Assembly (NCBI RefSeq): GCF_947568905.1
Contig: NC_079168.1
Span: 18,166,001 to 18,230,000 of the forward strand
Direction: 5' to 3'
DNA from: Ostrea edulis
Lineage: Eukaryota
Length of the DNA: 64,000 bases
In this document: positions 563-27,781 of the stretch, piece after piece
How the letters are laid out: every line of letters starts with the position of its first letter
How positions within the stretch are numbered: the stretch's first letter is position 1
Program-made: the position numbers and the translations under genes
The notes under the pieces: model-generated
The model's database searches: none
What the model was told of the DNA's origin: nothing
Seen by the model: the letters and a program-made list of their open reading frames with translations, nothing else

Positions 563-3133
563 CTACGTGCGAAGAAGTGCCATGGACGGTTCCCGAAGTT
601 TTAAACATTGTAAACATTCAGAAAATCGACAGCAAAGGAACTCTTCTTCTTCATCATCATCGTTGCATCCTATAAGAAGGAAAACAACAACAACTTCATC
701 TTTCTCAGCGTCGTAGTAGCAGATTGCCGAGCCGCTGTCGCCTTGCTGAAGTTTGAATTTTTTGTCCCCATCTTCATAACGAATTGTATCGCTTCTTCTA
801 AACTGAGAGCCGCTTGTTCCTGTCCGTGAATCCTCCATTTCAGATTCGGATGAGCTACTGTCAATTTTTTCATATGTTTCTCCATTGTATGCGACAAAAA
901 CCGGACGAAGATTTGAAGTTTTGTATAAATATAATTTTTTGTCATAGAGGTTTTGGTAATTGCCGTTAAATACTCTCAAGTTGGACGTTTTTCCAAAAGG
1001 ATGATACAGCCTTTGGCGCAATTCTACTTCTGAATGAGAAGAAACTTTAATCGCTGTAAAATCATTAAATGCTCCTGTAATATCATCAGATGGTTCTATG
1101 GTATAACGTTTTTTGGATTTTCCTATGAATTGCTTCTCAGTTGTATAAACCCTTTCTTCCGGGGGTGCGACATGTGAGCATGTGAATATATATTTTGCAC
1201 TCTTGGAGTCCTCGCCGAATACACACCCTATTCCCTTTCCCAAATCGCCCCGACTGTTCTTTTTAATGCATATTGTGCATCCAGATTCTAGAGTTTTCAT
1301 AAATATTATACCTTTTACCGATGGAACAATTTTGAGATTTCCTTTGAACTCGGGCCACATTTCTTTCAAAAGCTTGTCTACTTGATCTTTAAAGAATTGG
1401 CTCCTCTGAATGTGTGCTGTGTTTTTCACTTTGATGGTGAATGTTTGAGAAGTCTTTTTTATGGAGCGGATTTCTTCAAATCTGACAAGACATGAAAATC
1501 AAATGAAAGAGATCATGACTAGAAGATGTAAATCTGCTTTCTGTTCATAAGAAAAGCAGATACTTATAAAAGATATCTATAATATCATTTTACCACGGAA
1601 TAGCAGGTACAAATAGTATTCTATTATTATTATTATTTTTATTCTGCATTCATAATATTTTTTCTGTATTGTTATTTGGGAAGAGGGACTGTGGCGTCTT
1701 TTTTCCAAATAACTATCTTAAAATGTGAGTGGGTAATGGGGAATCCTCACCCATGTTAAAAATAAATTTAAGCTTTATAATGAATTTTGAATTTAAATTA
1801 TATTTTGTTTGAAACTAACCTTTCAAGAGCTAGCTGTATTTCGAAAGGGATTTGTTCTGTAAGCATGTTCTCTTGTTGCTTGATAGCGCGTTGAAGTCCA
1901 TCAATTGCTGTTTTGACTTCGTTGGCTTTTCTTGCAGTTTTCTCATTCCAATCCATACAGAAGCTTTCCTCAAAAGAATTCATCATTAGCCCTACAGCCT
2001 TGTCGTCGATGAAGTCCGACAGAACAAACTTCAAAGGCCACAAAGAAGATGGTCGCCTGTTTTTCACGATACGTTTAACATGTTTTCTAATTTTGTATTC
2101 TGGTCCATACAATGGAATTTCATGCTTTGGGAAGGCAAACAAATCGTCCGACACAATGGATGTTATGTGTCCAACCAAAGCTTGGTTTACTTCTTTGGCT
2201 AATGTAGATGCGATTGTTTGAATTACTCTGTCCAAGTTTTGATCATCTGGTAATAATTGTAGGAAACGGAAATTTATCAGCTCTTCATTACTTCTGTAAT
2301 GAGAGAGAATGATTTTCCCATCATCTCCAATACACCAATTTTGAATTCGTTTCCTGCTATTATCAATAGACTTCCGAACAAAGGTTATCGTGGCATTGGC
2401 CTTTCTGACGAATTGCTTCTCAAGTAATCTCGAAAACCGACCAGTGATTCCATTTTTACCCTGAATTAAAACTCTAGCTATTAGCTTCTTGTCTACATCA
2501 TTCATGATAAGCCCGATGTTTTCAGCAAACGTCTTTCGGACAGCATACAGTTCACTTTCTGATGTAGCATCAATATCGATGTCATGTAGACCAAGGATGT
2601 AAACAATGTTTTCCAAGTTCTCTAAACTACATGCACCACTAAGGCTAGTTAGAAGCATGGACGACTGAAATGAAAAACACTAATTTTTGAATCACAGTTT
2701 TGTATTTATGATGATGGTACGTGATTGAAGAGTTACTTACATCGTTACACATTTGAAGAGCAAGTCCATTTGGTTGAATTCTACAAGCCTTGACAACCAC
2801 CACATACATTTGCGGAACATACTGCCCTTTGAAATATGAATCGTTGATGACTTGTTGAAGTCCGTGAGAATTTACACATCCTTCTTTTTCAACTCGCCTT
2901 TTATCCAATAAAGAGTCATAATGCTTTTCATAATCTTTATCAAGACTGAGAAAGATAGCATTAGGAGGTTGTAGAAGCGTCCTGAAAGTTTCATAAACCG
3001 TTTTTCCAAAAGTTGACTTGTGAGATTGTATTATTTCCTCAAAAGGTTGTTGAAGAATTTTCAATCTTGGTAAATATTCCCATGGAAGTAAAACGTTCGA
3101 ATACCAAATATGTATACAGTCCAAGGAATCCAT
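563..3133 (-). CDS. 3-exon gene, 718 aa: ~410 aa helical N-terminal region plus C-terminal trypsin-fold (PA clan, Nal1/alpha-lytic-like) serine protease. Exons 3133-2741, 2664-1820, 1481-563
   Basis: Three long ORFs join in frame at canonical sites: GAT|GTAAGT..tttCAG|TCG (phase 0) and AG|GTTAGT..tgtCAG|A (phase 2). Catalytic motifs FTCSHV (His), NDFTAI (Asp), GDSGS (Ser). Start AAAAATGG at 3133 chosen by alignment with the paralog. Confidence 0.85.
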
Positions 3134-3494
3134 TTTTAAATAGAAAAAGGGGATTTTTACATAAGGAATACCCTTCTTTGTGTAAACGAAGATTTTAAAT
3201 GCATTATGCACACTAACGTCTAGGCAGACACGTGTGACTTGTAACCAGTTGCAGTGAAGTGCTTATCATTGCCATCCGTTACCTACTCTCTACATTGTAT
3301 ACCCAATACCTTGATTTTTGGAGATAATGCAGTTTTACTTAGTACAAATCGGGTTTGTAAACGTGTGTTACCTTGAATACGTCATACCTATCGGTTGGCG
3401 AAAAAAATATGACCCACTTTTTTGTGCACTGAACATTTTCATGGGAGGGCACTTTTTAAAATTGTTGTTTTAACTATTTGTTTGTATGCATGTA

Positions 3495-3630
3495 TGTTGT
3501 TTTAACAGCTACATTTGTTTGTTTTAATGTTGTTTTAACAGCTACATTTGTTTGTTTTAATGTTGTTTTAATAGCTACATTTGTTTGTTTCAAAGGTGTT
3601 TCAACTGTTACGTTTGTGTGTTTTTAACAA
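3495..3630. repeat. 33-bp minisatellite, 3 clean copies plus a degenerate one
   Basis: Unit tgttgttttaacagctacatttgtttgttttaa starts at 3495, 3528 and 3561. Confidence 0.85.
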
Positions 3631-3880
3631 CGACCTACATGTACAAGGTTACCAGTTGCACATTCACGGGCCTTTTTCCGCCCCGGAAGTGCAATTGATA
3701 AGATCAATTCTTGCTTTTTGAGAACTCAATATTTTTAAATCTAGAAAAGTTTAATAGAAAAAGTATGTAAGCCATGCAGACTACGTTCATTGTCACAGCT
3801 TTTGTGTTTTCCCATCAATTAATGTTAATATTGATAATAATGTTCCCATCAAAAAATGTTAATATAGCCCCATTCTCTCT

Positions 3881-5041
3881 TTTTAGGTCACCTGCGAAAA
3901 ATCCGTACTCGTGCATTAACAAATGCATACATAGTGATGTAGAGCAGGAAGGCCTCTACCAAAATTGTAAATTTCATGATCCCCGGGATAGAGGTTCTGA
4001 CCCCAGGGCGGGGCCAAACTTGGTATATATAGTGTGTATGTGTAAAACACTTAAATAACATATTTAGTGCTATTGATTCTAAATTGAAAATAAATGGATG
4101 TTTAGAAAGAATAAATAGTCCTTCCCCAAAATTTTAAATTTGATGATCCCAGGGGTAGGGATTTTGGTATTAGGGTGGGGCCAAAATGGTCAAATATTAA
4201 ATGTGTGAACAATACACATTTTTAACTTCTTCTTGATAAGTGACATTTCAATTCCTTTCAATTTTGGTATGAAACATATTTGGGACAAGGGGGACATACA
4301 TAGTAGATTTCAGGACTCCTGCACACCAGGGGCCTTGGGGGCGAGGCAGAAACTGCCTAAAATGATAAATTTTTAAATATCTTCTATATAAATCATGCAC
4401 ACGTCACCAAAATTGTAAATTTTATGATCCCAGGGGTAGGATTATGATATCAGAGGGGACCAAAATGGTCAGTTATTGAATATGCGAGCAATAGAACATT
4501 ATTAACTTCTTCTTGATAAGTAACATTCGAATTCCTTTCAAATTTGGTATGAAGCATCTTTGGGGCAAGAGGGACGTAAATTGTAAACTTCAGGATTCCT
4601 GCACTCCCGGGGCCTAAGGGACGGGGCAAAAACTGACAAAAATTGAATTTTCAAAAATCTTCTCTGCAATCACACATGTGTAAGAAAAGTTAAATGCATA
4701 CACAGGCACTCGACGTATTAAATAGCTATAATAAAAAAAAAAAATCTCTTCCTGTATGTCTACAGGAAGCCAAGTTTTTAAAATTATAGATATTTAACAC
4801 GTCCAGTGCCTGTGAATGCTTAGTGTTGTAGAGTAAGAGGGCCGCTTCAACACTTGTAAATTTTATGATCCCCGGAGTAGGGGTTCTGAACCCAGGATGG
4901 GGCCAAAACTTAGTATTATATAGTATGAATGTGTAAAACATTTAAATGATATCTTGATACTGAATTGAAACTAGATATCTAGAAGGAATAGGTCGACCTT
5001 TACCAATACTCAGGTGACCGATAAGGCCTGTGCGCCTCTTG
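3881..5041 (+). mobile_element. Non-autonomous Helentron-associated (HINE-like) element with internal ~170-bp satellite-like repeats
   Basis: 5' ttttaggtcacctg and 3' caggtgacc subterminal inverted repeats, a terminal ggcctgtgcgcc hairpin, and a recurring aaattgtaaatttcatgatcccc..ggggccaaa unit. Confidence 0.7.
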
Positions 5042-5779
5042 ATGTATATAGCCTCTCTCTTTTTCCTCTCTCTAAAAATAATAACACAAATCGCACTTTT
5101 CAACCATTTAATCATAGTTGTATAGATCTGAAAGTAAAACTGCAATCATTAGGTAAAATTGCAATAATATCAACCCTTGATTTTATGATAGTGCACTGGT
5201 AGAATAGATCTAGAAAAGGGGTATATGTGGTGCAAAGAGAAAAACACCACATTACATATAATTTCTCTTTAATTTAGAATAAAATAATATCAATTAACTT
5301 GGTGCAGAGATTTGTTTGCTAGCAAGCAGACATACTTATAATTCAATTCACTCAAGCAACAATACAAATAATTGATGGTTCTACATTTCTTCCAAACCGA
5401 GAAAGTGTATTATTCCTATTTTCTTCTTTGTACCAATTTAAAATGCATTTTAATACTTTCAAGAGACTTCGATGCACACATGTTTGTGTTCATGTTGCTG
5501 GCGATGTTAATGATTTTCTCTCTCCAGCATTCCCAGGAACCTTGTCAGATACATGTACTTGAGTCCACTTGTCATATCATTTTGTCCACTTGTCAGTTAA
5601 ACGAAATTTTAAAGTTTAAATAAATTGAAATAAAAATGCTCGATTACTGCCTTCCAATTATCGGCAATTTTTTCTGACAATCCGCCAAGCATGATCTGAC
5701 AATTAACATACTAGTAATTATCAGACAAGTGGGAGGCAGAAATATGACACCATAATACGTCTTTACTCGTTTCAAATTT

Positions 5780-5796
5780 AATATATATAATATATA

Positions 5797-5836
<40 letters not shown>
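5780..5836. repeat. (AT)n microsatellite
   Basis: Direct reading of the sequence. Confidence 0.95.
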
Positions 5837-5840
<4 letters not shown>

Positions 5841-6478
5841 AGGTGAAGATAACGAACAGTGATCAATCTCATAACTCCTATAAGCAATACAAAATAGATA
5901 GTTGGGCAAACACGGACCCCTGGACACACCAGAGGTGGGATCAGGTGCCTAGGAGGAGTAAGCATCCCCTGTTGACCGGTCACACCCGCCGTGAGCCCTC
6001 TATCCTGATCAGGTAAACGGAGTTATCCGCAGTCAAAATCAGTGTGCCAAGAACGGCTTAGCAATCGGTATGAAACACGTCAGACAGCATTTGACCCAAT
6101 GCGAGGTTGTATTGACGAACTAGATCGTTATAACGACCATAGAATTTGCGAAATGCTGACTTCAATCGAGACTGTTGAAATCCCTGTACCATCAACTTGT
6201 TTGTCAGTAGCTTACCTCGATTTAAAAACTGACTATACAAAGAAAAAGCTCTTGCATATCGAATCAGTTGAGATATATAAACACCATATGCAGGTGATAA
6301 TGGAATATTGCTACACAAATATTGGAAGTTGACGATGGAGAAGCTGAAATCATCCCGTTTGTCATACAGTTGAGTTGTCAGTTTGCCGTTAATGTCTACT
6401 TTCAATAAAATATCTAAGTATGAAGCAGAAGTGGACGACTCTTTGGTGTCCTTTATTTCGAGCTCACGGGGATATATC
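5837..6478 (-). mobile_element. 5'-truncated Penelope-like retroelement (RT C-terminus plus 3' terminal repeat)
   Basis: ORF 6058-6480 (IYPRELEIKDT..LYDKRDDFSFSIVN..YGVYISQLIRYARA) matches the fragments at 12.8 kb and 23.5 kb. The same terminal repeat recurs many times in the window. Confidence 0.8.
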
Positions 6479-6491
6479 ATATATATATATT

Positions 6492-8999
6492 CTATAAAGG
6501 AAGTATATTGATATGATAGTCGGCTCTATTCTTTAGACAAACGATTCCTTCATGTAGCCTACAACAAACAAACCCATCGTCATATTCTCCGACGATTAAA
6601 AACACGACACTTATGACGTTTCTTTCTTCGTCGAAACAGCATACGGCGGATCCACTGTCGCCTGGACGAATTTGTCTGGTGATATGTGTTGGTATTACAA
6701 CGTCAATTCTCCGAAATGGAAAACGATTTTCACTGCTTTGAACAGATTCCATTGAATGTTCTTCATCACAGTCCTCGTATTTTAACAACGTTTCACCAAC
6801 GTACTTAAGAAAAATCGGGTCATCTTCACCTCTCCTATGAAAGTAGAGACCGGTACTTTCCTTCTGCAGCACAGAAAAGTCTCCATCGAACAATGTTACC
6901 CCAGGAGTGCCAGTAAAAGATATTGGTGATCTTAAATCTTGCCTTGCCGTTAATGGTGGGTCGATAGGAACCGCAGCGAAGTCTAATAATCCTACAACAC
7001 ACTCATCATCTGTCGTGATGCACAGGTCTTTTACAGAACGTCCTACAACATTCTTTTCGTTATCATACATCGTAAAGCCCGGGGGTGCCACATGAGCGCA
7101 TGTTATAGCAAACTGAACGGCTTCCGCCATGTCGCCGATCACTCCAGCTACTCCGCGTTTGTATTTTCCTTTCAGATGAAAACCTATCGTTCCACCGGAT
7201 TCAAACGTAGCAAAGAATGTTATTTTTTTCGCAAATGGTTCCAAAATAAAATCATTTGCTTCAAATTCTTTCCAATCCCTCAGCAGCTCTTGGATTTCAG
7301 TTTTCAAGGAAGTTTTGTCGCGTGAATATTCTGCTCTTGAAATACCAATGACCAGGGTATCATCTCTTTTCTTTATTGATGAGACATGCTTCAGTCTAAA
7401 AAAAAAAAAAAAGAAGATAATTTGATAAAAGAATTAAAATTTCGTTCAAATGTGCAGCTTCCCATAAAAAATATTCAGGTTTTACAATATCTTTGCTATA
7501 TCTTACCTCCACAAATAAATCTGCAATTCATAAGGAATGTCTTCTCTCAGATATGTCGTTTGATCACGGATGACGTCAGACAGAGTGTCAAGTTCGTGAA
7601 TTAAGTTTTGATACTGATTCTCTGCCTTACACATTTGCTTCCGTATATACTGCACTACTAAAGGTAGGGAAGAAGGATCCAGAATTTCTGAAAGGGTAAT
7701 ACTTTCATTTCGTGACTTTTTGAACCACAATTTATGTGCAATCATGTCAAAAAAGCAACAACGTTCCCCAGTTAATTCAGGTTCACTGATTTCAAATCCA
7801 AAGCTCTGTTCTATCGCATTGCGTACTTCATCTTTCACAGTTGTCGCAATATCCATGCTGATTGTGTTTACCTTTCCATCTCTGTTTTCTGTCACTATTT
7901 TGTGTAGTTTATGGTTCACTTTATCCTCTCTCTCCTGGACAATTCTCATAACCTGCTGAGCACACGAATCGCAATCCCAAACAGTTATCTGATTATGATT
8001 GTTTTGTGCATCTTGTCGGAGACAGCTAGACATTGTGGAAAAAGAATCACGAAACGATTTCTCCAGTAATCTTGAGCATCGTTCTTTGATGCCCTTCTCT
8101 CCTTTGAAAAAGATTCTTGAGGGTAAATGCTTGTCATCGTCGCTAATTGCATTTCTTACAAGACTGGTGATAGTTCGATGGTCATTTTGGCCGTGGTTTT
8201 CTATTGAGGCAGAATCATATACACAGTTCACTATATACACAATTGGGAATGTAGAAATTTCTCTAGTGCCCAGAGAAACTTTCAAATGCTTCAAAAGATT
8301 GAGGCTCTGAAAGTAGATTAAATGTAATTCTGTGAATGGCATACAGTTTTGACATTTTCTGAGTCAGACCAGTTCTAATTCTACAATGTAATCAATCCCT
8401 ATAGTTAAAAAATTCAAGTATCCTAAAACTGATTACTAGGCTGTGTTTTATCTTATAGCGACGAGGAACTGACCCACGACAAGCTTAAATTGTACATCGA
8501 TACCACCTACACACCTTTTAACGGAAAAGTAGTACACATGAATGTAAACATTATCGGTGTGAAGTGCACCGTGATATGATGCATTTAAAATGTCCGTATT
8601 CATGATAAATAATACATATTTAAAAAAAATCATAATTACCTGTGTTGAGAGTTCAATCTTGGCTGCTCTCTTTGCGAAATTTAATGCGACCAAATACATG
8701 TGGGGTACAGCAGAATGATTCATCTCCTCCATGACACACCACAATTTGTCTCCATCAATATCACAGCTCGCGATTCTTTCTGAGAGAGAATCAATGTATT
8801 CTCTGTTGTTCCCGCTGCTACAGAAAAAGAGAACCGGGTTCTCAATAGGTCCCAGAAGGGCATCATATGCCCACTTTGGAAGAAACTCTTGACAAAGATG
8901 TAATTTATCCCTGTAAGTATCCTGCAGTCTCTTCAGCCGCGGATAACACGAACTCAGTATCTCGGTCTTCGAAATGTTGGCTTTGATCTGCGAACTCAT
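6492..8999 (-). CDS. 3-exon paralog of 563-3133, 687 aa: helical N-terminal region plus trypsin-fold serine protease. Exons 8999-8640, 8306-7507, 7395-6492
   Basis: In-frame splicing at CAG|GTAATT..tttCAG|AGC (phase 0) and AG|GTAAGA..tttTAG|A (phase 2), the same phases as the first paralog. Motifs ITCAHV, LDFAAV, GDSGS. Shared motifs YPRLK, VPHMY/VPQMY, IVYI, SRLLEK, IP(Y/F)E(L/I)Q. Confidence 0.85.
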
Positions 9000-11095: not shown

Positions 11096-12061
11096 CACAG
11101 GACCTGAAGTATGGATATTACTACCCCCCCCCATTTTTTCATAATTTTTTTTTTGGTGGCAATAATTTCTCTGAAATGTATGAATTCCCAGTCTATCTCA
11201 TCCCTCTTTCGATTCATGTAATCGTTTCACGCTTTTTGTAAGCTTTAAAGATTGGCCTTCTACCGGTATAATAAAATACACAAGGTAAGAAACAAAAATT
11301 TGTAAACAAACAGGGGGTCCCCGTTTCCGGGCACATTTTCCAAGTAATTACAGCGTTACCTAAGGAATTTTGACGAGCGGCAGGTCGGGGAGATGTCATA
11401 CTACAAGTCTCTTCAACTCAAAACCCATCTCATCTCTTTTATTTGACACAATCTTGCGTGCATTGATCGGACAGGGCTTCATCTCTTCCACTGGCAGCCA
11501 AAAAGGAGGTCACAGAGTACGAATTTGTTGTACACGCCGTGTGATTGGTTCGCAAAGGCATTGCTTAGTCTCGGGATCATCCGAAGGGTCTCGGGATTAT
11601 TCGCGGACCAATCACACGACACGTTATAAATTCGTACTCTGTGACCTCCTTTTTGGCTGCCAGTGGAAGAGATGAAGCCCTGTCCGATCAATGCACGCAA
11701 GATTGTGTCAAATAAAAGAGATGAGATGGGTTTTGAGTTGAAGAGACTTGTAGTATGACATCTCCCCGACCTGCTGCTCGTCAAAATTCCTTAGGTAACG
11801 CTGTAATTACTTTGGAAAATGTGCCCGGAAACGGGGACCCCCTGTTTGTTTACAAATTTTTGTTTCTTACCTTGTGTATTTTATTATACCGGTAGAAGGC
11901 CAATCTTTAAAGCTTACAAAAAGCGTGAAACGATTACATGAATCGAAAGAGGGATGAGATAGACTGGGAATTCATACATTTCAGAGAAATTATTGCCACC
12001 AAAAAAAAAATTATGAAAAAAAGGGGGGGGGGTAGTAATATCCATACTTCAGGTGCCTGTG
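11096..12061. mobile_element. 966-bp foldback/MITE-like DNA element, almost entirely one inverted repeat
   Basis: Arms ~11096-11552 and ~11603-12061 are near-perfect reverse complements. Ends CACAGG..CCTGTG. 8-bp target-site duplication acagtgaa/acagtgta. Confidence 0.9.
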
Positions 12062-12099
12062 ACAGTGTACAGAACAACACAAGCATTTTTTAACATAGT

Positions 12100-12569
12100 A
12101 GTATAAACTGATTATACACATAATGCATACTGCATGATTTCTTCGGAAAGAAACACTATGTACACGACGCATTAAGTCGGTTTTTGATTTGATGTGATCG
12201 TGAAGTCTAACAATCCATTTAGCCCCAAGCTCTTTCATTCTAGTAAGGGACAAATCTACATAAATTGCTATTGTCTCAAGCTCTTTCATTCTAGTAAGGG
12301 ACAAATCTACATAAATTGCTATTGTCTCAAGCTCTTTCATTCTAGTAAGGGACAAATCTACATAAATTGCTATTGTTTCTTCCACGGACTTAGATTGTTT
12401 TACAACTTCTGCCGCATAAAATTGTTGAAACTGCGATTTCAAGAAATCTTTTGCGCATTCATTGACAGACAAGTCCGTAGTCTGAAGCTTGTTAGTAAAG
12501 TTTGAGGAATAGTAGTACAGCAGCCTTTTAGACTTCAAACGATTGCAAAAATCTTCAGTAATTCCTCCT
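12100..12569 (-). pseudogene. Helical exon-like ORF with an in-frame 17-aa triplication; possible relic or exon related to exon 2 of the protease paralogs
   Basis: Acceptor ttttcgattgtttCAG at 12570-12572. Open frame GGITEDFCNRLKSKRLLYYY..AKDFLKSQFQQF..(ETIAIYVDLSLTRMKEL)x3. The donor is uncertain. Confidence 0.4.
12226..12376. repeat. 51-bp tandem repeat x3
   Basis: Units start at 12226, 12277 and 12328. Confidence 0.95.
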
Positions 12570-18184: not shown

Positions 18185-21100
18185 ATTACTTACAGTTTTG
18201 AATTGGAATGTCAGAGGAATTATGTCCTCTAGTGTATCTTTGACAAATCTTTTACGTTTATCTGACTGTGATATTGCTGTAATCTCAGAATACAAGTTAC
18301 CCGAATAATGTTCTAAATTCTTTGGTTGTATTGATAAGAATTATATAAGTGCAGCAAAATTTGAAAAATCGGACAAAAATGATGAAATAGGCAAAGGAGG
18401 TGTAGCAATATTATACAAAAATTCCTTAGAATTTTACACATCTTCAGTTTACACTAACTCCAACAGAGTTGTTGGTATCTGTTTAAAAACTCCAAATCAT
18501 GTTCCATTATATGTTTTTGGTGTGTATTTACCGTCTGAAAACAATGTTGATCAATATAGAGAAGTGTTGAATATACTTAACGGATTATTCACTAATTACT
18601 CAAATCATGGTCATGTAATTTTTGCTGGTGACATGAATGGAAGCATACTACAAAAAGATGCTGACAGGACAAATATTTATAAATCAGCTGAACTTACAAA
18701 TTTTGTCAGGAAAAACAACATGTATTGTGATGTTACTAGTAGTAAGAAAAACCAATGTCAAGATGTTTATACATTTGTACCTTGTAAAACCATGTTAGAT
18801 TATATATTTGTTAGTGAATCCCTACAAAATCGTATTTTAGATTATGCAATTATAGAAGAAGGTATAATATCTAGCACCTCAGACCACTTACCTATAATAG
18901 TTAAGATTGAAGTTTTGGAAAACCCACACACATTATTACCAAACACATCTAAATGGCCTGCGTGGCACAGAATATGCACAGATACAAAGATCCAAGTACT
19001 GTAACCAGCTGAAAAAAGACTTAAACCATATACTGCTCGATGAGAACAACATGTCGTCTGTAAATGATATAAATACATATTCAACAGAAATTGTTAACGC
19101 TGTGATAAAAAGTGCCAAACTAACTATTCCCATGTGTTCATATAATCCTCATACCAAACCTTATTGGAATACCTCAGTAAAGAATCTCATAAGAACGAAA
19201 TGGAACTTAGAGTCAAATGGGTAAAAGAAGGAAGACCTCGGGGTATGCAGCACATATCGTATGCTGAGTACAGGTTGTATAAACATGCAAAACGCCATTT
19301 CCGACGATGTCAAGAAAGCGCCTCCCAGGACTTTATTCGAAAAACGTACGAAGATATCGACAACGCTGCAGGAATCGACATTCGATTGTTTTGGAAATAA
19401 ATTCGTCGACAAAAACCACGTCAAACAAAGTTATATCCAGAAATACAGTTTGCCGAAAGAGTAGGAAATACACCTGAAAGTGTCGCTTCAGTTTTTGCTG
19501 AATACTTCTCAACTGTGTACGAGCCCGGACAAAATGAAATGTATGACAATCAATTTTACAACAATACCATTCGACAATACAATCGCATCAAAATACAAGA
19601 AAATCAAAATTCTGCCGATCTTCCAGGTGGATATATTACAGAAAAGGAAGTAGTTGATTCTATAACACTATTAAAATTTAAAAAAAAAGCCCCTGGGCCC
19701 GACAAAATTCAATCGGAACATTTGATTCATGGAAAATGTGTATTATCAAAATATTTATGTGTATTATTCAACAGCATAATAAAACTAGGTAAAATCCCCT
19801 CTGGATGGAAACAAGGTTTTATAGTACCAATTTTCAAGGGTGGAAACAAACAAAAAACTTCTCCTGACAGCTACCGACCCATTTCATTATTGTCTACTAT
19901 ATTCAAAGTTTTTGAAAAAATCATCTACACAAGGATTATGAACGTAACATTCAAAGAGAAATACCCGAGTCCTCAACAACAAGGTTTTCATAAAGGTTTA
20001 AGTACTATCACAGCTGCATTTAACCTTCAAGAAACAATCTTACATCACATTGAAAACGGATCACGTGTATATGCATGTTTTCTAGACAGCCGAATAGCCT
20101 TTGATACAGTATGGAGAAAAGGATTGCTTTGTAAAGTTAACGAAATAGGTATCAAGGGAAAATTATGGACATTGATAGACGACTGCCATATCGATACCAA
20201 AAGTGCTGTAATTGTAAATTACCAACAATCAGACTGGTTCCCGGTTGAACAAGGAATACGGCAAGGCGGTGTCTTATCTGGATTTTATACACAGTTTATA
20301 TCAATGACTTACTTAACGAACTTGGTCACATCAATAAAAACTTCGGAATTCATAATATAGAGTCATCGACCTCTGCGAGATATTGCCTGTTTATCGTCAA
20401 CTCCGCACTCACTCCAGAATATGTTGGATGTAGCATACACTTATTCTTGTAGATGGAGATTCTCTTTCAACGCTAAAAAATCATGTATTATAGTATTCGG
20501 TAAATCTCACAATGTCGTCTCAAATCAATGGTTAGTGGGCGATGAAATCATTCCTGTAAAGAGTGACTACAATCACCTTGGGATCATTCAAAACTCTCAT
20601 TTCAAATCTCTAACCAGGACAAAGGAGGCATGTGACAAAGGCAGACGATCTTATTACTCCATAAAACACTTATCTTTAGAAAATTCCAATCCAGTTACTC
20701 TTGTGAATCTTTATAAAAAGGTAGTCCTACCTTCTACATTATATGGATGTGAAATTTGGAATGATCTTAAAACCCAGGATCTTCAGATGTTGCGTCGACT
20801 TCAACATTTTATCGTTAAAGATATTCAAAGCTTAAATCTATCAACACGGTCCGATATGTGTGAAAGCTTATTAGGTCTCAGACCTATCATATCTGGAATT
20901 GATAAAAGGAAACTGTTGTTTTTAGGAAAACTGTGCAATTTCTCTCACAATGTGCTGGCGAAACAAATACTTCTCTTCAGACTCTTTACATTTTTGTGTA
21001 ACCCATGGGAAACCACGCACGGATTCATTAAAGACATTCTAGTCATTCTGGATAAGTACTCCTTGACGCAATACCTTGCATCTTACTTGGAATCTGGTGC

Positions 21101-22460
21101 CTTCCCAAACAAATATACCTGAAAAAACACACTGTAAAATCCTCTATTTCTCTTTACGAAGATTGTGAATGGAATAAACGAACATATCTTGACTCAGACT
21201 TTACGCGATTTATACAGTTACATGATGGAAAGGGGTTGCCAAGAATTTGGAAAATCATATGGTCGACACAAGAAACCAAAATTATTAAAACCTTAGTTAA
21301 ACTCTGGACAATACCTCCCATGAGAAACATATATACATGCCAACTTTGTAACTCCCAATATAATGATATGTTTAAACACATTGCCTGCAGTTGTCCCAAC
21401 TTTTCCTCAAACAGAGAACAATTTTGGGACGATATTACAAACCTTGATCTGTGTGTCTGTGCAGAATTCTGTGCCCTTGATGAAGAAGATTTATATACAT
21501 ATATGTTAGGTAAAGCCCCAATTTATCCACTGTCAGAACAGAAGGAAAAAAAGTTACTACTTATATGTGGGAATTATTTAATTAAAGTTTTTGCTATATA
21601 CAAAAGGTGCATATGAATTTCAACTAAAAGTTAGTATACAATAAGTTCCTTTTATATCACATTTCCTTTCTTTTTTATTCATTTACATTTAATTATGTAA
21701 TGGTAGTTTTTTCTTCTTCTTTGTTCTCACATTTTCATATTTGTACATATGTTGTATGATTCATCCCTAATATAATATATATATTTGATATACTCTCTGC
21801 AAAGAGGAATAAAATATTGAATGAATGAAAAAATCCCATATTCTAAAAGAGACAGAGAACCTCGGTCATTCAATTGCCGACATAACTTCATCTCTATTAT
21901 GAATTCTGTCAAAGATTATCCCAGACGACGGGCTAAATATGAAAAAGAAGAACTTGATACATTGTCAGAATGGATTAAAAGTATAAGAGGAATATTAAAA
22001 TCCCGCATTAAACATATTTAACAAAAGTACGTTCCAACTATCCTTCTGTGTTTAGTAAACCAAAAGTGAAAAAAGAATTAGATAGGTTACATGAGGAATA
22101 TATTTTGGTTCCAGCTGACAAAGCTTGTAACAACATTGTCTTTGTTTGTAAGGTTCATTATTACAACTGTATTTTAAACGAACTTGGCATTAACTCCACT
22201 TTTGGTAATCGTACTTATACTCCAACTGCCCTTCCAAAAGATGACATTCTTCAAAACCATGCTTCAGTTTTAGGCACATTTGGTATTCCTGTCGGTGGGT
22301 CGAATGAATGAGTTACCGTACCTATACTGGATTCCTAAACTACATAAAAACCCATACAAACAAAGATACATCGCTGGATCCAGTAAGTGCTCTACCAAGC
22401 CCCTATCTTTGCTCCTCACGAAAATATTAACAGCTGTGAAGGAAAAACTTCAAACTTACT

Positions 22461-26644: not shown

Positions 26645-27781
26645 TCATGGCTTTATAAATAGTTCTTTGACAGTCAGTCTGAACTGCTTATTATAGATGA
26701 GATAAATTATTGGATTTGTTGCATTGTTTATACAATATGTCTTCACCAGAACTTCATAAAACGCCCTGCTTGTAGGTGAAAGATCTTCAATATTTACAAC
26801 TGAGCTTTTCAGAAGTATCTGACTAAGAAGATAAGGGAGGTAACTAAAAAGAAACGACAGCGTCACTGCAGAAAGAATGACGGTGGTTTTGGTCAGTTGA
26901 GCTTTCCGATGAAGTTTCGAATGACTGCTCCATTGAATCTCGTTCAGCATCACGTGATCACAGTCTCGAGAAATTGAAAACAGAGATGAAGACCTCCTGA
27001 CTTCGTATATTGTTAGGCTGTCTCGCGTGCAGGTTCCCTGAGAACTAAGTGAATCTCCGCTATCAATTCGAGGTATGTTTGTATTTTGTATCTGAGAACG
27101 TTTCCACTGCCAAATTCGCTTAAAGACTCTTAAGTATAAGAAAAACATAATGCAGAATGAAGTCACGAACACGGTTAAAAGAAATCCGTAAAAAAGGCCT
27201 ACAAACATGGAAAATTGGACATCATCTGCTATTGCGCATGTGCTGCCTACAAGTCCGGGTATGCAATTATTTTTAACTGTGCTTTTACCATAAATGCATG
27301 CTGACGTCCAGGAAATGACAATTGCAGTGGTTATGAGAATCAACACTCTTATTTTTGGATTGGCGTTTGAATACGGTATGGGCGAGCATATTTTTTGGTA
27401 TCTGTCTAAAGCAATGCACATCAACATTAATCCCTCACAAGCGTATGTCAGCATTGAAACACTTCTGAAGACTCGACAGAGTATATCATTGTCGAACAGC
27501 ACCGGGTTTCCTATCACATATATCTCAAAGGGAATGCTGAGACAACAGCAGGCAAGATCAAAAATAGCCAGCCAGAGAATATAAGTGTTGGCTGTTGTTC
27601 GCTTAAATTTCATGCCATATGCATACACTACAAAACCATTTCCGATCACACCAACAAACATTATTAGTCCAGAAAATATCATGGCAGCAATGTTATAAGC
27701 AGCAATGTGATAATTCCACATCCACAATAGCAATTGTCTCTCAAATCCTAGAGTTGCATTGGTTGTATTTTTGCATTCCAT
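26645..27781 (-). CDS. Intronless class A (rhodopsin-like) GPCR, peptide-receptor-like orphan, 378 aa
   Basis: Seven hydrophobic segments. GN in TM1, LAIFD in TM2, C in TM3, IALDRY, FLFSYLP in TM6, NNATNPIIY in TM7. N-terminal N-glycosylation sequons NTT and NAT. Confidence 0.95.
   Translation of the reverse strand: MECKNTTNATLGFERQLLLWMWNYHIAAYNIAAMIFSGLIMFVGVIGNGFVVYAYGMKFKRTTANTYILWLAIFDLACCCLSIPFEIYVIGNPVLFDNDILCRVFRSVSMLTYACEGLMLMCIALDRYQKICSPIPYSNANPKIRVLILITTAIVISWTSACIYGKSTVKNNCIPGLVGSTCAIADDVQFSMFVGLFYGFLLTVFVTSFCIMFFLYLRVFKRIWQWKRSQIQNTNIPRIDSGDSLSSQGTCTRDSLTIYEVRRSSSLFSISRDCDHVMLNEIQWSSHSKLHRKAQLTKTTVILSAVTLSFLFSYLPYLLSQILLKSSVVNIEDLSPTSRAFYEVLVKTYCINNATNPIIYLIYNKQFRLTVKELFIKP

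What the first reader, a model, noticed from the sequence alone, without database searches (positions are those of the whole stretch)
563..8999. Tandem pair of signal-less, non-canonical trypsin-fold proteases fused to a large helical N-terminal module: candidate intracellular sensor-protease system
Seen: both paralogs (718 and 687 aa) keep a complete triad (TC[S/A]HV, DF[T/A]A, GDSGS). They have no signal peptide, no IVGG activation site and none of the disulfide pattern of secreted animal trypsins. The SG(C/G)TI..G(I/V)xG..T(C)xHV and GDSGS layout with a ~60 aa pro-like segment in front resembles Nal1/alpha-lytic-type PA-clan proteases rather than animal S1A enzymes. Known: intracellular PA-clan proteases such as FAM111A and plant NAL1 exist, and proteases fused to oligomerising modules act as effectors in innate-defence systems. 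Inference: an undescribed bivalve cytoplasmic protease family, possibly activated by oligomerisation, with the tandem-array and rapid-divergence pattern typical of immune genes.
Basis: partly seen in the sequence, partly recalled or inferred. Interest (0 to 1): 0.85.

Follow-up and report, generated by a model that had tools for sequence, protein, structure and literature searches.

The report
Oyster intracellular NAL1-like protease gene pair
Two neighbouring oyster genes encode cytoplasmic proteins that join a trypsin-fold cutting enzyme, most like rice NAL1 and bacterial alpha-lytic protease, to a dynamin-like module that has lost its nucleotide-binding motifs; the family is undescribed, known only from a few bivalves, and may be a regulated signalling or defence protease.

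Summary
Two intact three-exon genes lie on the minus strand, 718 aa (563-3133) and 687 aa (6492-8999). They have canonical splice sites and the same intron positions and phases.

- **What is absent.** There is no signal peptide, no transmembrane segment, no Pfam match, and no S1A disulfide or activation motif.
- **Family size.** A profile search of 1.84 billion proteins found about ten true relatives. All the named ones are unnamed pteriomorph bivalve proteins (oyster, pearl oyster, mussel, scallop) with the same three-exon layout.
- **STAND link.** One relative carries the module behind an nSTAND3 NTPase.
- **Against an immune reading.** Copy number is low and dN/dS is 0.23, which is not an immune-type expansion.
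- **Verdict.** This is an undescribed intracellular protease family, probably regulated by its N-terminal module. A defence role is plausible but unproven. The scan noted a related theme elsewhere in this genome (s1-271414).

The parts
563..3133 (-). Gene A, 718 aa, three coding exons (3133-2741, 2664-1820, 1481-563 including the stop)
   Evidence: Open frames, GT-AG junctions (GTAAGT; AG|GTTAGT) and translation; start context AAAATGG with no in-frame upstream ATG
1820..3133 (-). Gene A N-terminal module (residues 1-412): N-terminal helix, alpha/beta domain without a P-loop, helical bundle; contains intron 1 at 2665-2740
   Evidence: Homologous to gene B and P0002 over the full length; fold inferred from the P0002 model; no Walker A or NKxD motif
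1304..1481 (-). Gene A connector of about 59 aa (beta-hairpin, long helix, strand) at the start of exon 3
   Evidence: AF2 model secondary structure; not covered by the protease alignments
566..1303 (-). Gene A PA-clan serine protease domain; His 1172-1174, Asp 1061-1063, Ser 734-736
6492..8999 (-). Gene B, 687 aa, three coding exons (8999-8640, 8306-7507, 7395-6492 including the stop)
   Evidence: 56% identical over the full length to Saccostrea cucullata XP_062612707.1, which is also 687 aa; AATAAA 35 nt after the stop
7507..8999 (-). Gene B N-terminal module (residues 1-386); contains intron 1 at 8307-8639
   Evidence: Aligned with P0002:1-392, whose model gives the alpha/beta plus helical-bundle fold
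7218..7395 (-). Gene B connector of about 59 aa
   Evidence: Alignment with gene A; coordinates
6495..7217 (-). Gene B PA-clan serine protease domain; His 7092-7094, Asp 6981-6983, Ser 6654-6656
   Evidence: Alignment with gene A; coordinates; dN/dS 0.23 against a related oyster contig

Best explanation
Shown: these are two intact paralogous genes of a small, undescribed protein family known so far only from pteriomorph bivalves. Each encodes a soluble protein of about 700 aa with no signal peptide. The protein has three parts. (i) An N-terminal module of about 390-410 aa: a leading helix, an alpha/beta domain and a helical bundle. (ii) A connector of about 60 aa. (iii) A C-terminal PA-clan serine protease domain of about 245 aa with a conserved His/Asp/Ser triad and a GDSG oxyanion motif. 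This domain is structurally closest to plant NAL1 and bacterial alpha-lytic/streptogrisin proteases.

Inferred: the protease is catalytically active and works inside the cell as a regulated, limited-proteolysis enzyme. The N-terminal module looks like a mitofusin/bacterial-dynamin-type G-domain plus stalk that has lost its nucleotide-binding motifs. I propose it acts as the assembly and regulation platform. It would bring protease domains together, by self-association or by recruitment to an upstream receptor, so that the active site becomes competent. This is the logic of the NAL1 hexamer and the FAM111A dimer.

Because one relative has the whole module fused behind an nSTAND3 NTPase, the most likely biological setting is innate-defence or cell-death signalling. 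I give that setting about 40% and other signalling roles about 30%.
For: - Gene models and paralogy.
- Triad conservation: the TCxHV His, the Asp and the G-S-G columns are invariant across six full-length relatives that share only 16-24% identity.
- Cytosolic location: no signal peptide or transmembrane segment, and five independently annotated orthologs start at the same N-terminal motif.
- Selection: dN/dS 0.23 on the protease exon. The three-exon layout is conserved in Saccostrea, Pinctada, Pecten and Mytilus.
- STAND link: P0014 combines nSTAND3 (PF20720, E 1e-26) with this module.
- Oligomer-dependent activity of NAL1 and FAM111A: PMC12012508 (read) and the abstract of PMC10920703 (listed).
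Against: - No enzymatic, expression or oligomerisation data exist.
- The N-modules of the mussel and scallop members are only marginally alignable with the oyster ones (hhalign E 0.009).
- Low copy number, purifying selection and a stable gene structure are unlike the lineage-specific expansions of typical bivalve immune genes.
- The window genes themselves carry no STAND, death-fold or TIR domain.
- The STAND fusion is seen in one unidentified organism only (Logan run SRR27896763).
Confidence: 0.55

Rival explanations
1. Ssy5/SltB-type prodomain control instead of assembly. The large N-terminal module would be an inhibitory prodomain. The protease cuts itself near the exon 2/3 junction (the connector), the two parts stay bound, and a signal removes or degrades the N-module. 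The freed protease then clips one or a few latent regulators such as transcription factors. On this reading the role is homeostatic or developmental signalling rather than defence.
For: The layout and size match. Ssy5 has a 381-aa prodomain plus a Cat domain, with autolytic cleavage and a non-covalently bound inhibitory prodomain (PMC3145550). SltB is a pseudo-enzyme (pseudokinase) domain plus a chymotrypsin-like protease that autoproteolyses between the two domains (PMC4985261). NAL1, the closest fold, is a regulator of transcription factors (PMC12012508). Low copy number, dN/dS 0.23 and a conserved gene structure fit a conserved signalling role. A motif is conserved at the domain junction (S-I/V-K-K).
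Against: No member matches Pfam Peptidase_S64 or any PA-clan model at a significant level. No cleavage site is known. The nSTAND3 fusion and the dynamin-like look of the N-module point towards assembly-type control.
Confidence: 0.25
2. Catalytically dead or non-proteolytic scaffold. On this reading the PA fold is kept as a binding domain.
For: The scallop member has GHSGG in place of GDSG. No activity data exist.
Against: His, Asp, Ser and the flanking glycines are invariant across members sharing under 25% identity. That conservation is hard to explain without catalysis. The Ser itself is kept even in the scallop protein.
Confidence: 0.07
3. A domesticated viral or mobile-element protease, or a recent bacterial transfer, not a host family.
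For: The genes sit among transposon fragments. The best non-plant structural neighbours are bacterial. Viral 3C-like and phage S1 proteases also match the fold.
Against: The exhaustive profile search found no bacterial or viral relative at E<=1e-3 apart from two repeat-driven false positives. The viral matches are generic PA-fold hits. The best is comparable to NAL1 by E-value (3.3e-8) but has lower TM-scores. The introns are conserved across four bivalve orders, and the tree broadly follows host phylogeny.
Confidence: 0.05
4. A mispredicted secreted digestive or clotting-type trypsin whose signal-peptide exon lies upstream.
For: Upstream 5' exons cannot be excluded without RNA data.
Against: Annotated models in Saccostrea, Pinctada, Mytilus (two) and Pecten all begin within about 10-25 residues of the same conserved N-terminal helix motif, and none has a hydrophobic leader. 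There is no IVGG-type activation site. There is no Cys after the His and no Cys four residues before GDSG. Pfam Trypsin does not match.
Confidence: 0.03

Closest known systems
Rice NARROW LEAF 1 (NAL1) serine protease (PDB 8HAU, 8PMG, 7Y77)
   Different: There is no detectable sequence similarity: identity in the structural alignment is 12-14%, and HMM searches of PDB sequences found nothing. NAL1's NTD and small ATP-binding domain are replaced here by a module of about 400 aa, alpha/beta plus helical bundle. H-to-D spacing is 37 here against 57 in NAL1. NAL1 is from plants; this family is from bivalves.
Alpha-lytic protease / streptogrisin group (MEROPS S1E; Lysobacter L5/L1, SGPB)
   Different: The S1E enzymes are secreted bacterial proteins with a large folding pro-region and disulfides. 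The oyster proteins are cytosolic and multi-domain, and show no sequence-level match.
Yeast Ssy5 (Peptidase S64) and Aspergillus SltB signalling proteases
   Same: The overall layout is the same: a large non-catalytic or pseudo-enzyme N-terminal domain of 380-600 aa followed by a chymotrypsin-like domain, in an intracellular signalling protease (PMC3145550, PMC4985261).
   Different: There is no Pfam Peptidase_S64 match. The N-terminal domains are unrelated (prodomain or pseudokinase there, a dynamin-like fold here). Autocleavage was not tested.
Dynamin superfamily, mitofusin/BDLP branch
   Same: The N-module's topology (leading helix, G-domain-like alpha/beta domain, helical bundle) aligns best with mini-MFN1/2, BDLP, LeoA and EHD4.
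STAND/NLR proteins with protease effectors (bacterial trypsin-linked conflict systems; the oyster NLR-ankyrin-protease of scan note s1-271414)
   Same: One relative (P0014) fuses the module to an nSTAND3 NTPase. Trypsin-like effectors in STAND-type conflict systems are documented in bacteria (PMC8195603).
   Different: The two window genes have no NTPase, repeat or death-fold domain. Sequence relatedness to the protease of s1-271414 could not be tested here.
FAM111A/B
   Same: These are intracellular trypsin-fold proteases with dimerisation-dependent activity and an antiviral role.
   Different: They are not among the 50 listed structural neighbours. There is no sequence match, and the N-terminal regions differ.

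Membership tests
PA clan (chymotrypsin-fold) serine peptidases | Two six-stranded beta-barrels | tested here: met
PA clan (chymotrypsin-fold) serine peptidases | His, Asp, Ser in that order, with a GDSG-type oxyanion motif | tested here: met
   TCxHV, D[FI] and G[DEH]SG columns are conserved in all members. The side-chain geometry in the model could not be measured.
MEROPS S1A (animal trypsin/chymotrypsin) | Signal peptide, zymogen activation at an IVGG-type N-terminus, Cys42-Cys58 and Cys191-Cys220 disulfides, Pfam PF00089 | tested here: not met
   No hydrophobic leader. Val follows the His, and there is no Cys at -4 of GDSG. PF00089 gave only E 0.15 in one of 12 members.
S1E alpha-lytic/streptogrisin | Secreted, with a large N-terminal folding pro-region; sequence membership | tested here: not met
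NAL1 family | Sequence homology to NAL1 | tested here: not met
   phmmer and a 12-sequence profile against all PDB sequences, which include NAL1, found nothing
NAL1 family | NTD plus small ATP-binding beta/alpha domain ahead of the protease; hexameric cage | tested here: inconclusive
Ssy5 / Peptidase_S64 | Match to PF08192 | tested here: not met
   No hit at E<=5 in any of the 12 members
Ssy5 / Peptidase_S64 | Autolytic cleavage between the prodomain and the Cat domain | not testable with these tools
   Needs protein expression
Dynamin superfamily GTPases | G-domain fold followed by, and preceded by, helices that form a bundle | tested here: inconclusive
Dynamin superfamily GTPases | G1 P-loop GxxxxGK[ST] and G4 [NT]KxD | tested here: not met
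   Regex search over all N-modules: no Walker A; a single isolated TKFD in one mussel protein
STAND NTPase immune receptors | STAND NTPase domain in the same chain | tested here: not met
   The window genes have no Pfam NTPase. Only the relative P0014 has nSTAND3 (E 1e-26).
FAM111 | Closest structural or sequence neighbour is the FAM111 protease domain | tested here: not met
   Absent from the top 50 of both PDB comparisons and from the sequence searches

The most novel reading that the evidence does not exclude
A bivalve-specific proteolytic signalling arm that does not depend on caspases. A mitofusin/BDLP-derived pseudo-GTPase would act as the sensor or assembly platform for a NAL1/alpha-lytic-type protease. 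Assembly would happen on a pathogen compartment, on an organelle, or on a STAND (nSTAND3/NLR) receptor. It would switch on the protease, which then cleaves host or pathogen proteins to trigger defence or cell death. If so, the NAL1-type intracellular protease would be an ancient effector shared by plants and animals.
Probability: 0.25. Interest if true: 0.8.

Novelty: new variant of a known kind. Interest (0 to 1): 0.6.

Why it matters
Intracellular trypsin-fold proteases are rare and tend to hold key regulatory posts: NAL1 in crop yield, Ssy5 in nutrient sensing, FAM111A in antiviral defence and replication.

This family adds three things:
- It places a NAL1/alpha-lytic-like protease fold in animals.
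- It gives that fold a new partner, a P-loop-less dynamin-like module.
- It links the module to STAND NTPases in at least one organism.

The family is invisible to Pfam and has only about ten representatives among 1.84 billion proteins, so standard annotation misses it. If it is a defence or cell-death effector, oyster immunity research would gain a concrete, testable protease pathway relevant to Bonamia, OsHV-1 and Vibrio disease. If it is not, it is still a clean example of a pseudo-enzyme domain harnessed to control a protease.

Tried and rejected
- **Profile libraries.** Pfam, NCBIfam and PADLOC scans of every exon found nothing significant. The only hints were LmuA at E 0.01 (PADLOC) and, across all family members, Peptidase_S6 at E 0.021 and Trypsin at E 0.15. 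I treat these as noise-level PA-clan echoes.
- **PDB sequence searches.** Single-sequence and profile searches of PDB sequences found nothing.
- **Word-indexed homolog searches.** Searches with the full-length alignment, with the P0014 module and with the N-module alignment returned only family members already known, plus one fragment. The tool's word filter limits what this shows.
- **P0006 and P0010.** These hits from the profile search looked like possible multi-domain relatives. They are repeat-driven false positives: one is a bacterial MBG-repeat/T9SS adhesin, the other an unknown repeat protein. Neither has a His or Ser motif.
- **Viral origin.** The BFVD search gave only generic PA-fold matches.
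- **Tandem arrays in other bivalves.** No second copy lies within 10 kb in Saccostrea, Pinctada, Pecten or Mytilus.
- **Positive selection.** The pairwise dN/dS is 0.23, which indicates purifying selection. Site-level tests need more sequences.
- **Not possible here.** I could not measure triad geometry because model coordinates are not exposed. 
Full report
**1. Is it there?**

The minus strand between 563 and 8999 holds two sets of three long open frames. Reading the DNA at the frame switches shows canonical junctions.
- Gene A: ...AACGAT|GTAAGT...TTTCAG|TCG (phase 0) and ...GAAAG|GTTAGT...TTGTCAG|ATTT (phase 2).
- Gene B: ...ACACAG|GTAATT...TTTCAG|AGC (phase 0) and ...TGGAG|GTAAGA...T(15)AG|ACTG (phase 2).

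Both start codons have A at -3, and neither has an in-frame upstream ATG before the preceding stop. Gene B has AATAAA 35 nt after its stop.

The two proteins are paralogs along their entire length. Identity is 33% in the last exon (E 3e-45), 24% in the middle exon (E 2e-16), weak in the first exon (E 0.004), and 27% overall. No third copy lies in the window.

**2. The C-terminal domain.**

No Pfam, NCBIfam or PADLOC model matches any exon, and no PDB sequence matches. An exhaustive HMMER scan of 1.84 billion representative proteins with a profile of the two last exons gave only 12 hits at E<=1e-3. Two of those are repeat-driven false positives.

The real relatives are 'uncharacterized' proteins of 673-772 aa from four bivalves, plus unnamed fragments from metagenome and SRA assemblies:
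- Saccostrea cucullata (XP_062612707.1)
- Pinctada imbricata (KAK3097360.1)
- Mytilus coruscus (CAC5368914.1, CAC5358876.1)
- Pecten maximus (XP_033757814.1)

In the 12-row alignment the TCxHV His, the D[FI] Asp and the G-x-S-G Ser columns are conserved, although identity is only 19-32% among all but one close fragment. In the six full-length proteins these columns are invariant.

An AlphaFold2 model of gene A's last exon built on that alignment has mean pLDDT 77 and pTM 0.68. Foldseek against the PDB gives 446 hits at E<=1e-3. Rice NAL1 leads, followed by Lysobacter L5/L1, alpha-lytic protease and streptogrisins.

NAL1 and S1E are statistically tied. Because no sequence-level link to either exists, I do not file it as a member of either family.

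S1A hallmarks are absent. There is no leader peptide. Val rather than Cys follows the His, and there is no Cys four residues before GDSG. H-to-D and D-to-S spacings are 37 and 109 in both paralogs. The D-to-S stretch includes an acidic, Ser-rich loop of about 15 residues with low confidence.

The first ~59 residues of the exon form a beta-hairpin, a long helix and a strand that lie outside the protease alignment. Their resemblance to NAL1's small ATP-binding domain ('four beta-strands and a curved helix', PMC12012508) is a lead only.

**3. The N-terminal module.**

I therefore modelled residues 1-392 of the Saccostrea ortholog of gene B, which is 56% identical over the full length. The alignment included the window's own exon translations.

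The model has pLDDT 77 and pTM 0.67. It shows a leading helix (16-31), a six-stranded alpha/beta domain (about 50-180) and a helical bundle (186-387).

- Foldseek finds nothing at E<=1e-3. Its weak list is nevertheless dominated by the dynamin superfamily: bacterial dynamin pair, MFN2, Mgm1, MxA, Drp1, SynDLP and LeoA.

These values fall in the tool's stated grey zone, so I rate the dynamin-like reading at roughly 55%.

No Walker A or NKxD motif exists in any member. If the module derives from a GTPase, it is now a pseudo-GTPase. This partly supports the separate first-stage note s1-311890.

The N-module profile finds nothing outside the family. Oyster N-modules align with that of the Logan protein (hhalign probability 81%, E 1e-5). 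They align only marginally with those of mussel and scallop (E 0.009), although lengths and shared short motifs agree.

**4. Relatives and evolution.**

All four other bivalve loci have the same three coding exons, with the last exon holding the connector plus protease. The gene structure thus predates the split of oysters, pearl oysters, scallops and mussels.

A maximum-likelihood tree of the protease region gives (Pinctada,(gene A,(gene B, Saccostrea, a JGI oyster contig))). Support for the A+B clade is 91/91. The duplication therefore happened in the oyster lineage after the split from pearl oysters and before Ostrea and Saccostrea diverged. A fragment 69% identical to gene A exists in another sample (P0003).

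No second copy lies within 10 kb in the other species. Gene B's protease exon, compared with a related oyster genomic contig, has dS 0.60, dN 0.14 and dN/dS 0.23.

These features speak for functional, constrained genes. They speak against the 'tandem array, rapid divergence' picture.

**5. The STAND link.**

P0014 has 1080 aa and is encoded without introns on a 3.4-kb Logan contig from run SRR27896763. It has an N-terminal nSTAND3 NTPase (PF20720, E 1e-26; Walker A GLPGSGKT), then about 360 residues, then the family's N-module and protease.

Trypsin-like peptidases are established effectors of STAND-type conflict systems in bacteria. Bivalves are known for lineage-specific immune architectures (PMC8195603). 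An earlier follow-up in this same genome, said there to be a flat oyster, reported an NLR-ankyrin protein with a 'NAL1/Ssy5-type' protease (s1-271414). I could not test whether that protease is related in sequence. In Pinctada the upstream neighbour carries a weak TIR hit, which may be coincidence.

**6. Mechanism.**

Shown: intact genes, no detectable secretion signal or membrane segment, a PA fold, a conserved triad, purifying selection, a large non-protease N-module, and one STAND fusion.

Inferred: an active endopeptidase whose activity is gated by the N-module.

I favour gating by assembly, through self-association or recruitment. Three observations support this. NAL1's triad is competent only in the hexamer (PMC12012508). 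FAM111A needs dimerisation (PMC10920703 abstract). Dynamin-like modules and STAND NTPases are both assembly devices.

The main rival is Ssy5/SltB-style control, in which an autocleaved, non-covalently bound N-terminal domain inhibits the protease (PMC3145550, PMC4985261). The 700-aa layout matches that model well. It would fit a conserved, low-copy signalling role better than a defence role.

**7. Novelty.**

I found no paper or family model that describes these proteins. The fold class and the idea of intracellular regulated PA proteases are known. New here are the family itself, its restriction to bivalves, the pairing with a P-loop-less dynamin-like module, and the nSTAND3 fusion. I rate it a new variant of a known kind, of moderate to good interest.

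Noticed in passing
L001:182-3424 (Logan SRR27896763, protein P0014): A 1080-aa intronless ORF joins an nSTAND3 NTPase (PF20720, E 1e-26) to this family's N-module and protease. The source organism is unknown, and the contig may be a transcript.
   Followed up: partly
L004:4071-5585 (Pinctada imbricata, upstream of the family member): The neighbouring single-exon gene of 504 aa has a weak TIR-domain hit. It could be coincidence, given how many TIR genes bivalves carry.
   Followed up: no
window 734-736 and 6654-6656: The catalytic Ser is encoded by AGC (gene A) and AGT (gene B), that is AGY rather than TCN. This may be useful as a lineage marker when the family is compared with other PA-clan groups.
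   Followed up: no
window 6058-6480 (-): A 140-aa ORF lies immediately downstream of gene B's stop and is unrelated to the protease family. By eye it looks like a repeat or mobile-element fragment.
   Followed up: no
window 11370-11784: Two 101-aa ORFs on opposite strands (11370-11675 + and 11479-11784 -) share an identical first ~60 residues. This implies a near-perfect inverted repeat of about 400 bp.
   Followed up: no
window 12011-12538 (-): This ORF contains three tandem copies of a 17-aa unit (ETIAIYVDLSLTRMKEL), so there is a 51-bp tandem repeat inside an open frame.
   Followed up: no
window 18522-21616 (+): A run of ORFs (160, 281, 233 and 126 aa) looks by eye like a non-LTR retrotransposon (endonuclease and reverse-transcriptase parts), broken into several frames.
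   Followed up: no
window 26645-27781 (-): A single-exon 378-aa ORF has seven hydrophobic stretches, a DRY-like motif and an NPxxY-like motif, so it is probably a rhodopsin-type GPCR gene.
   Followed up: no
exon-3 residues 209-223 of gene A (window about 812-856) and the matching loop in gene B: An acidic, Ser-rich, low-confidence loop sits just before a conserved F/Y-R-R-x-D motif inside the second beta-barrel. It could be a regulatory site (phosphorylation or cleavage).
   Followed up: no
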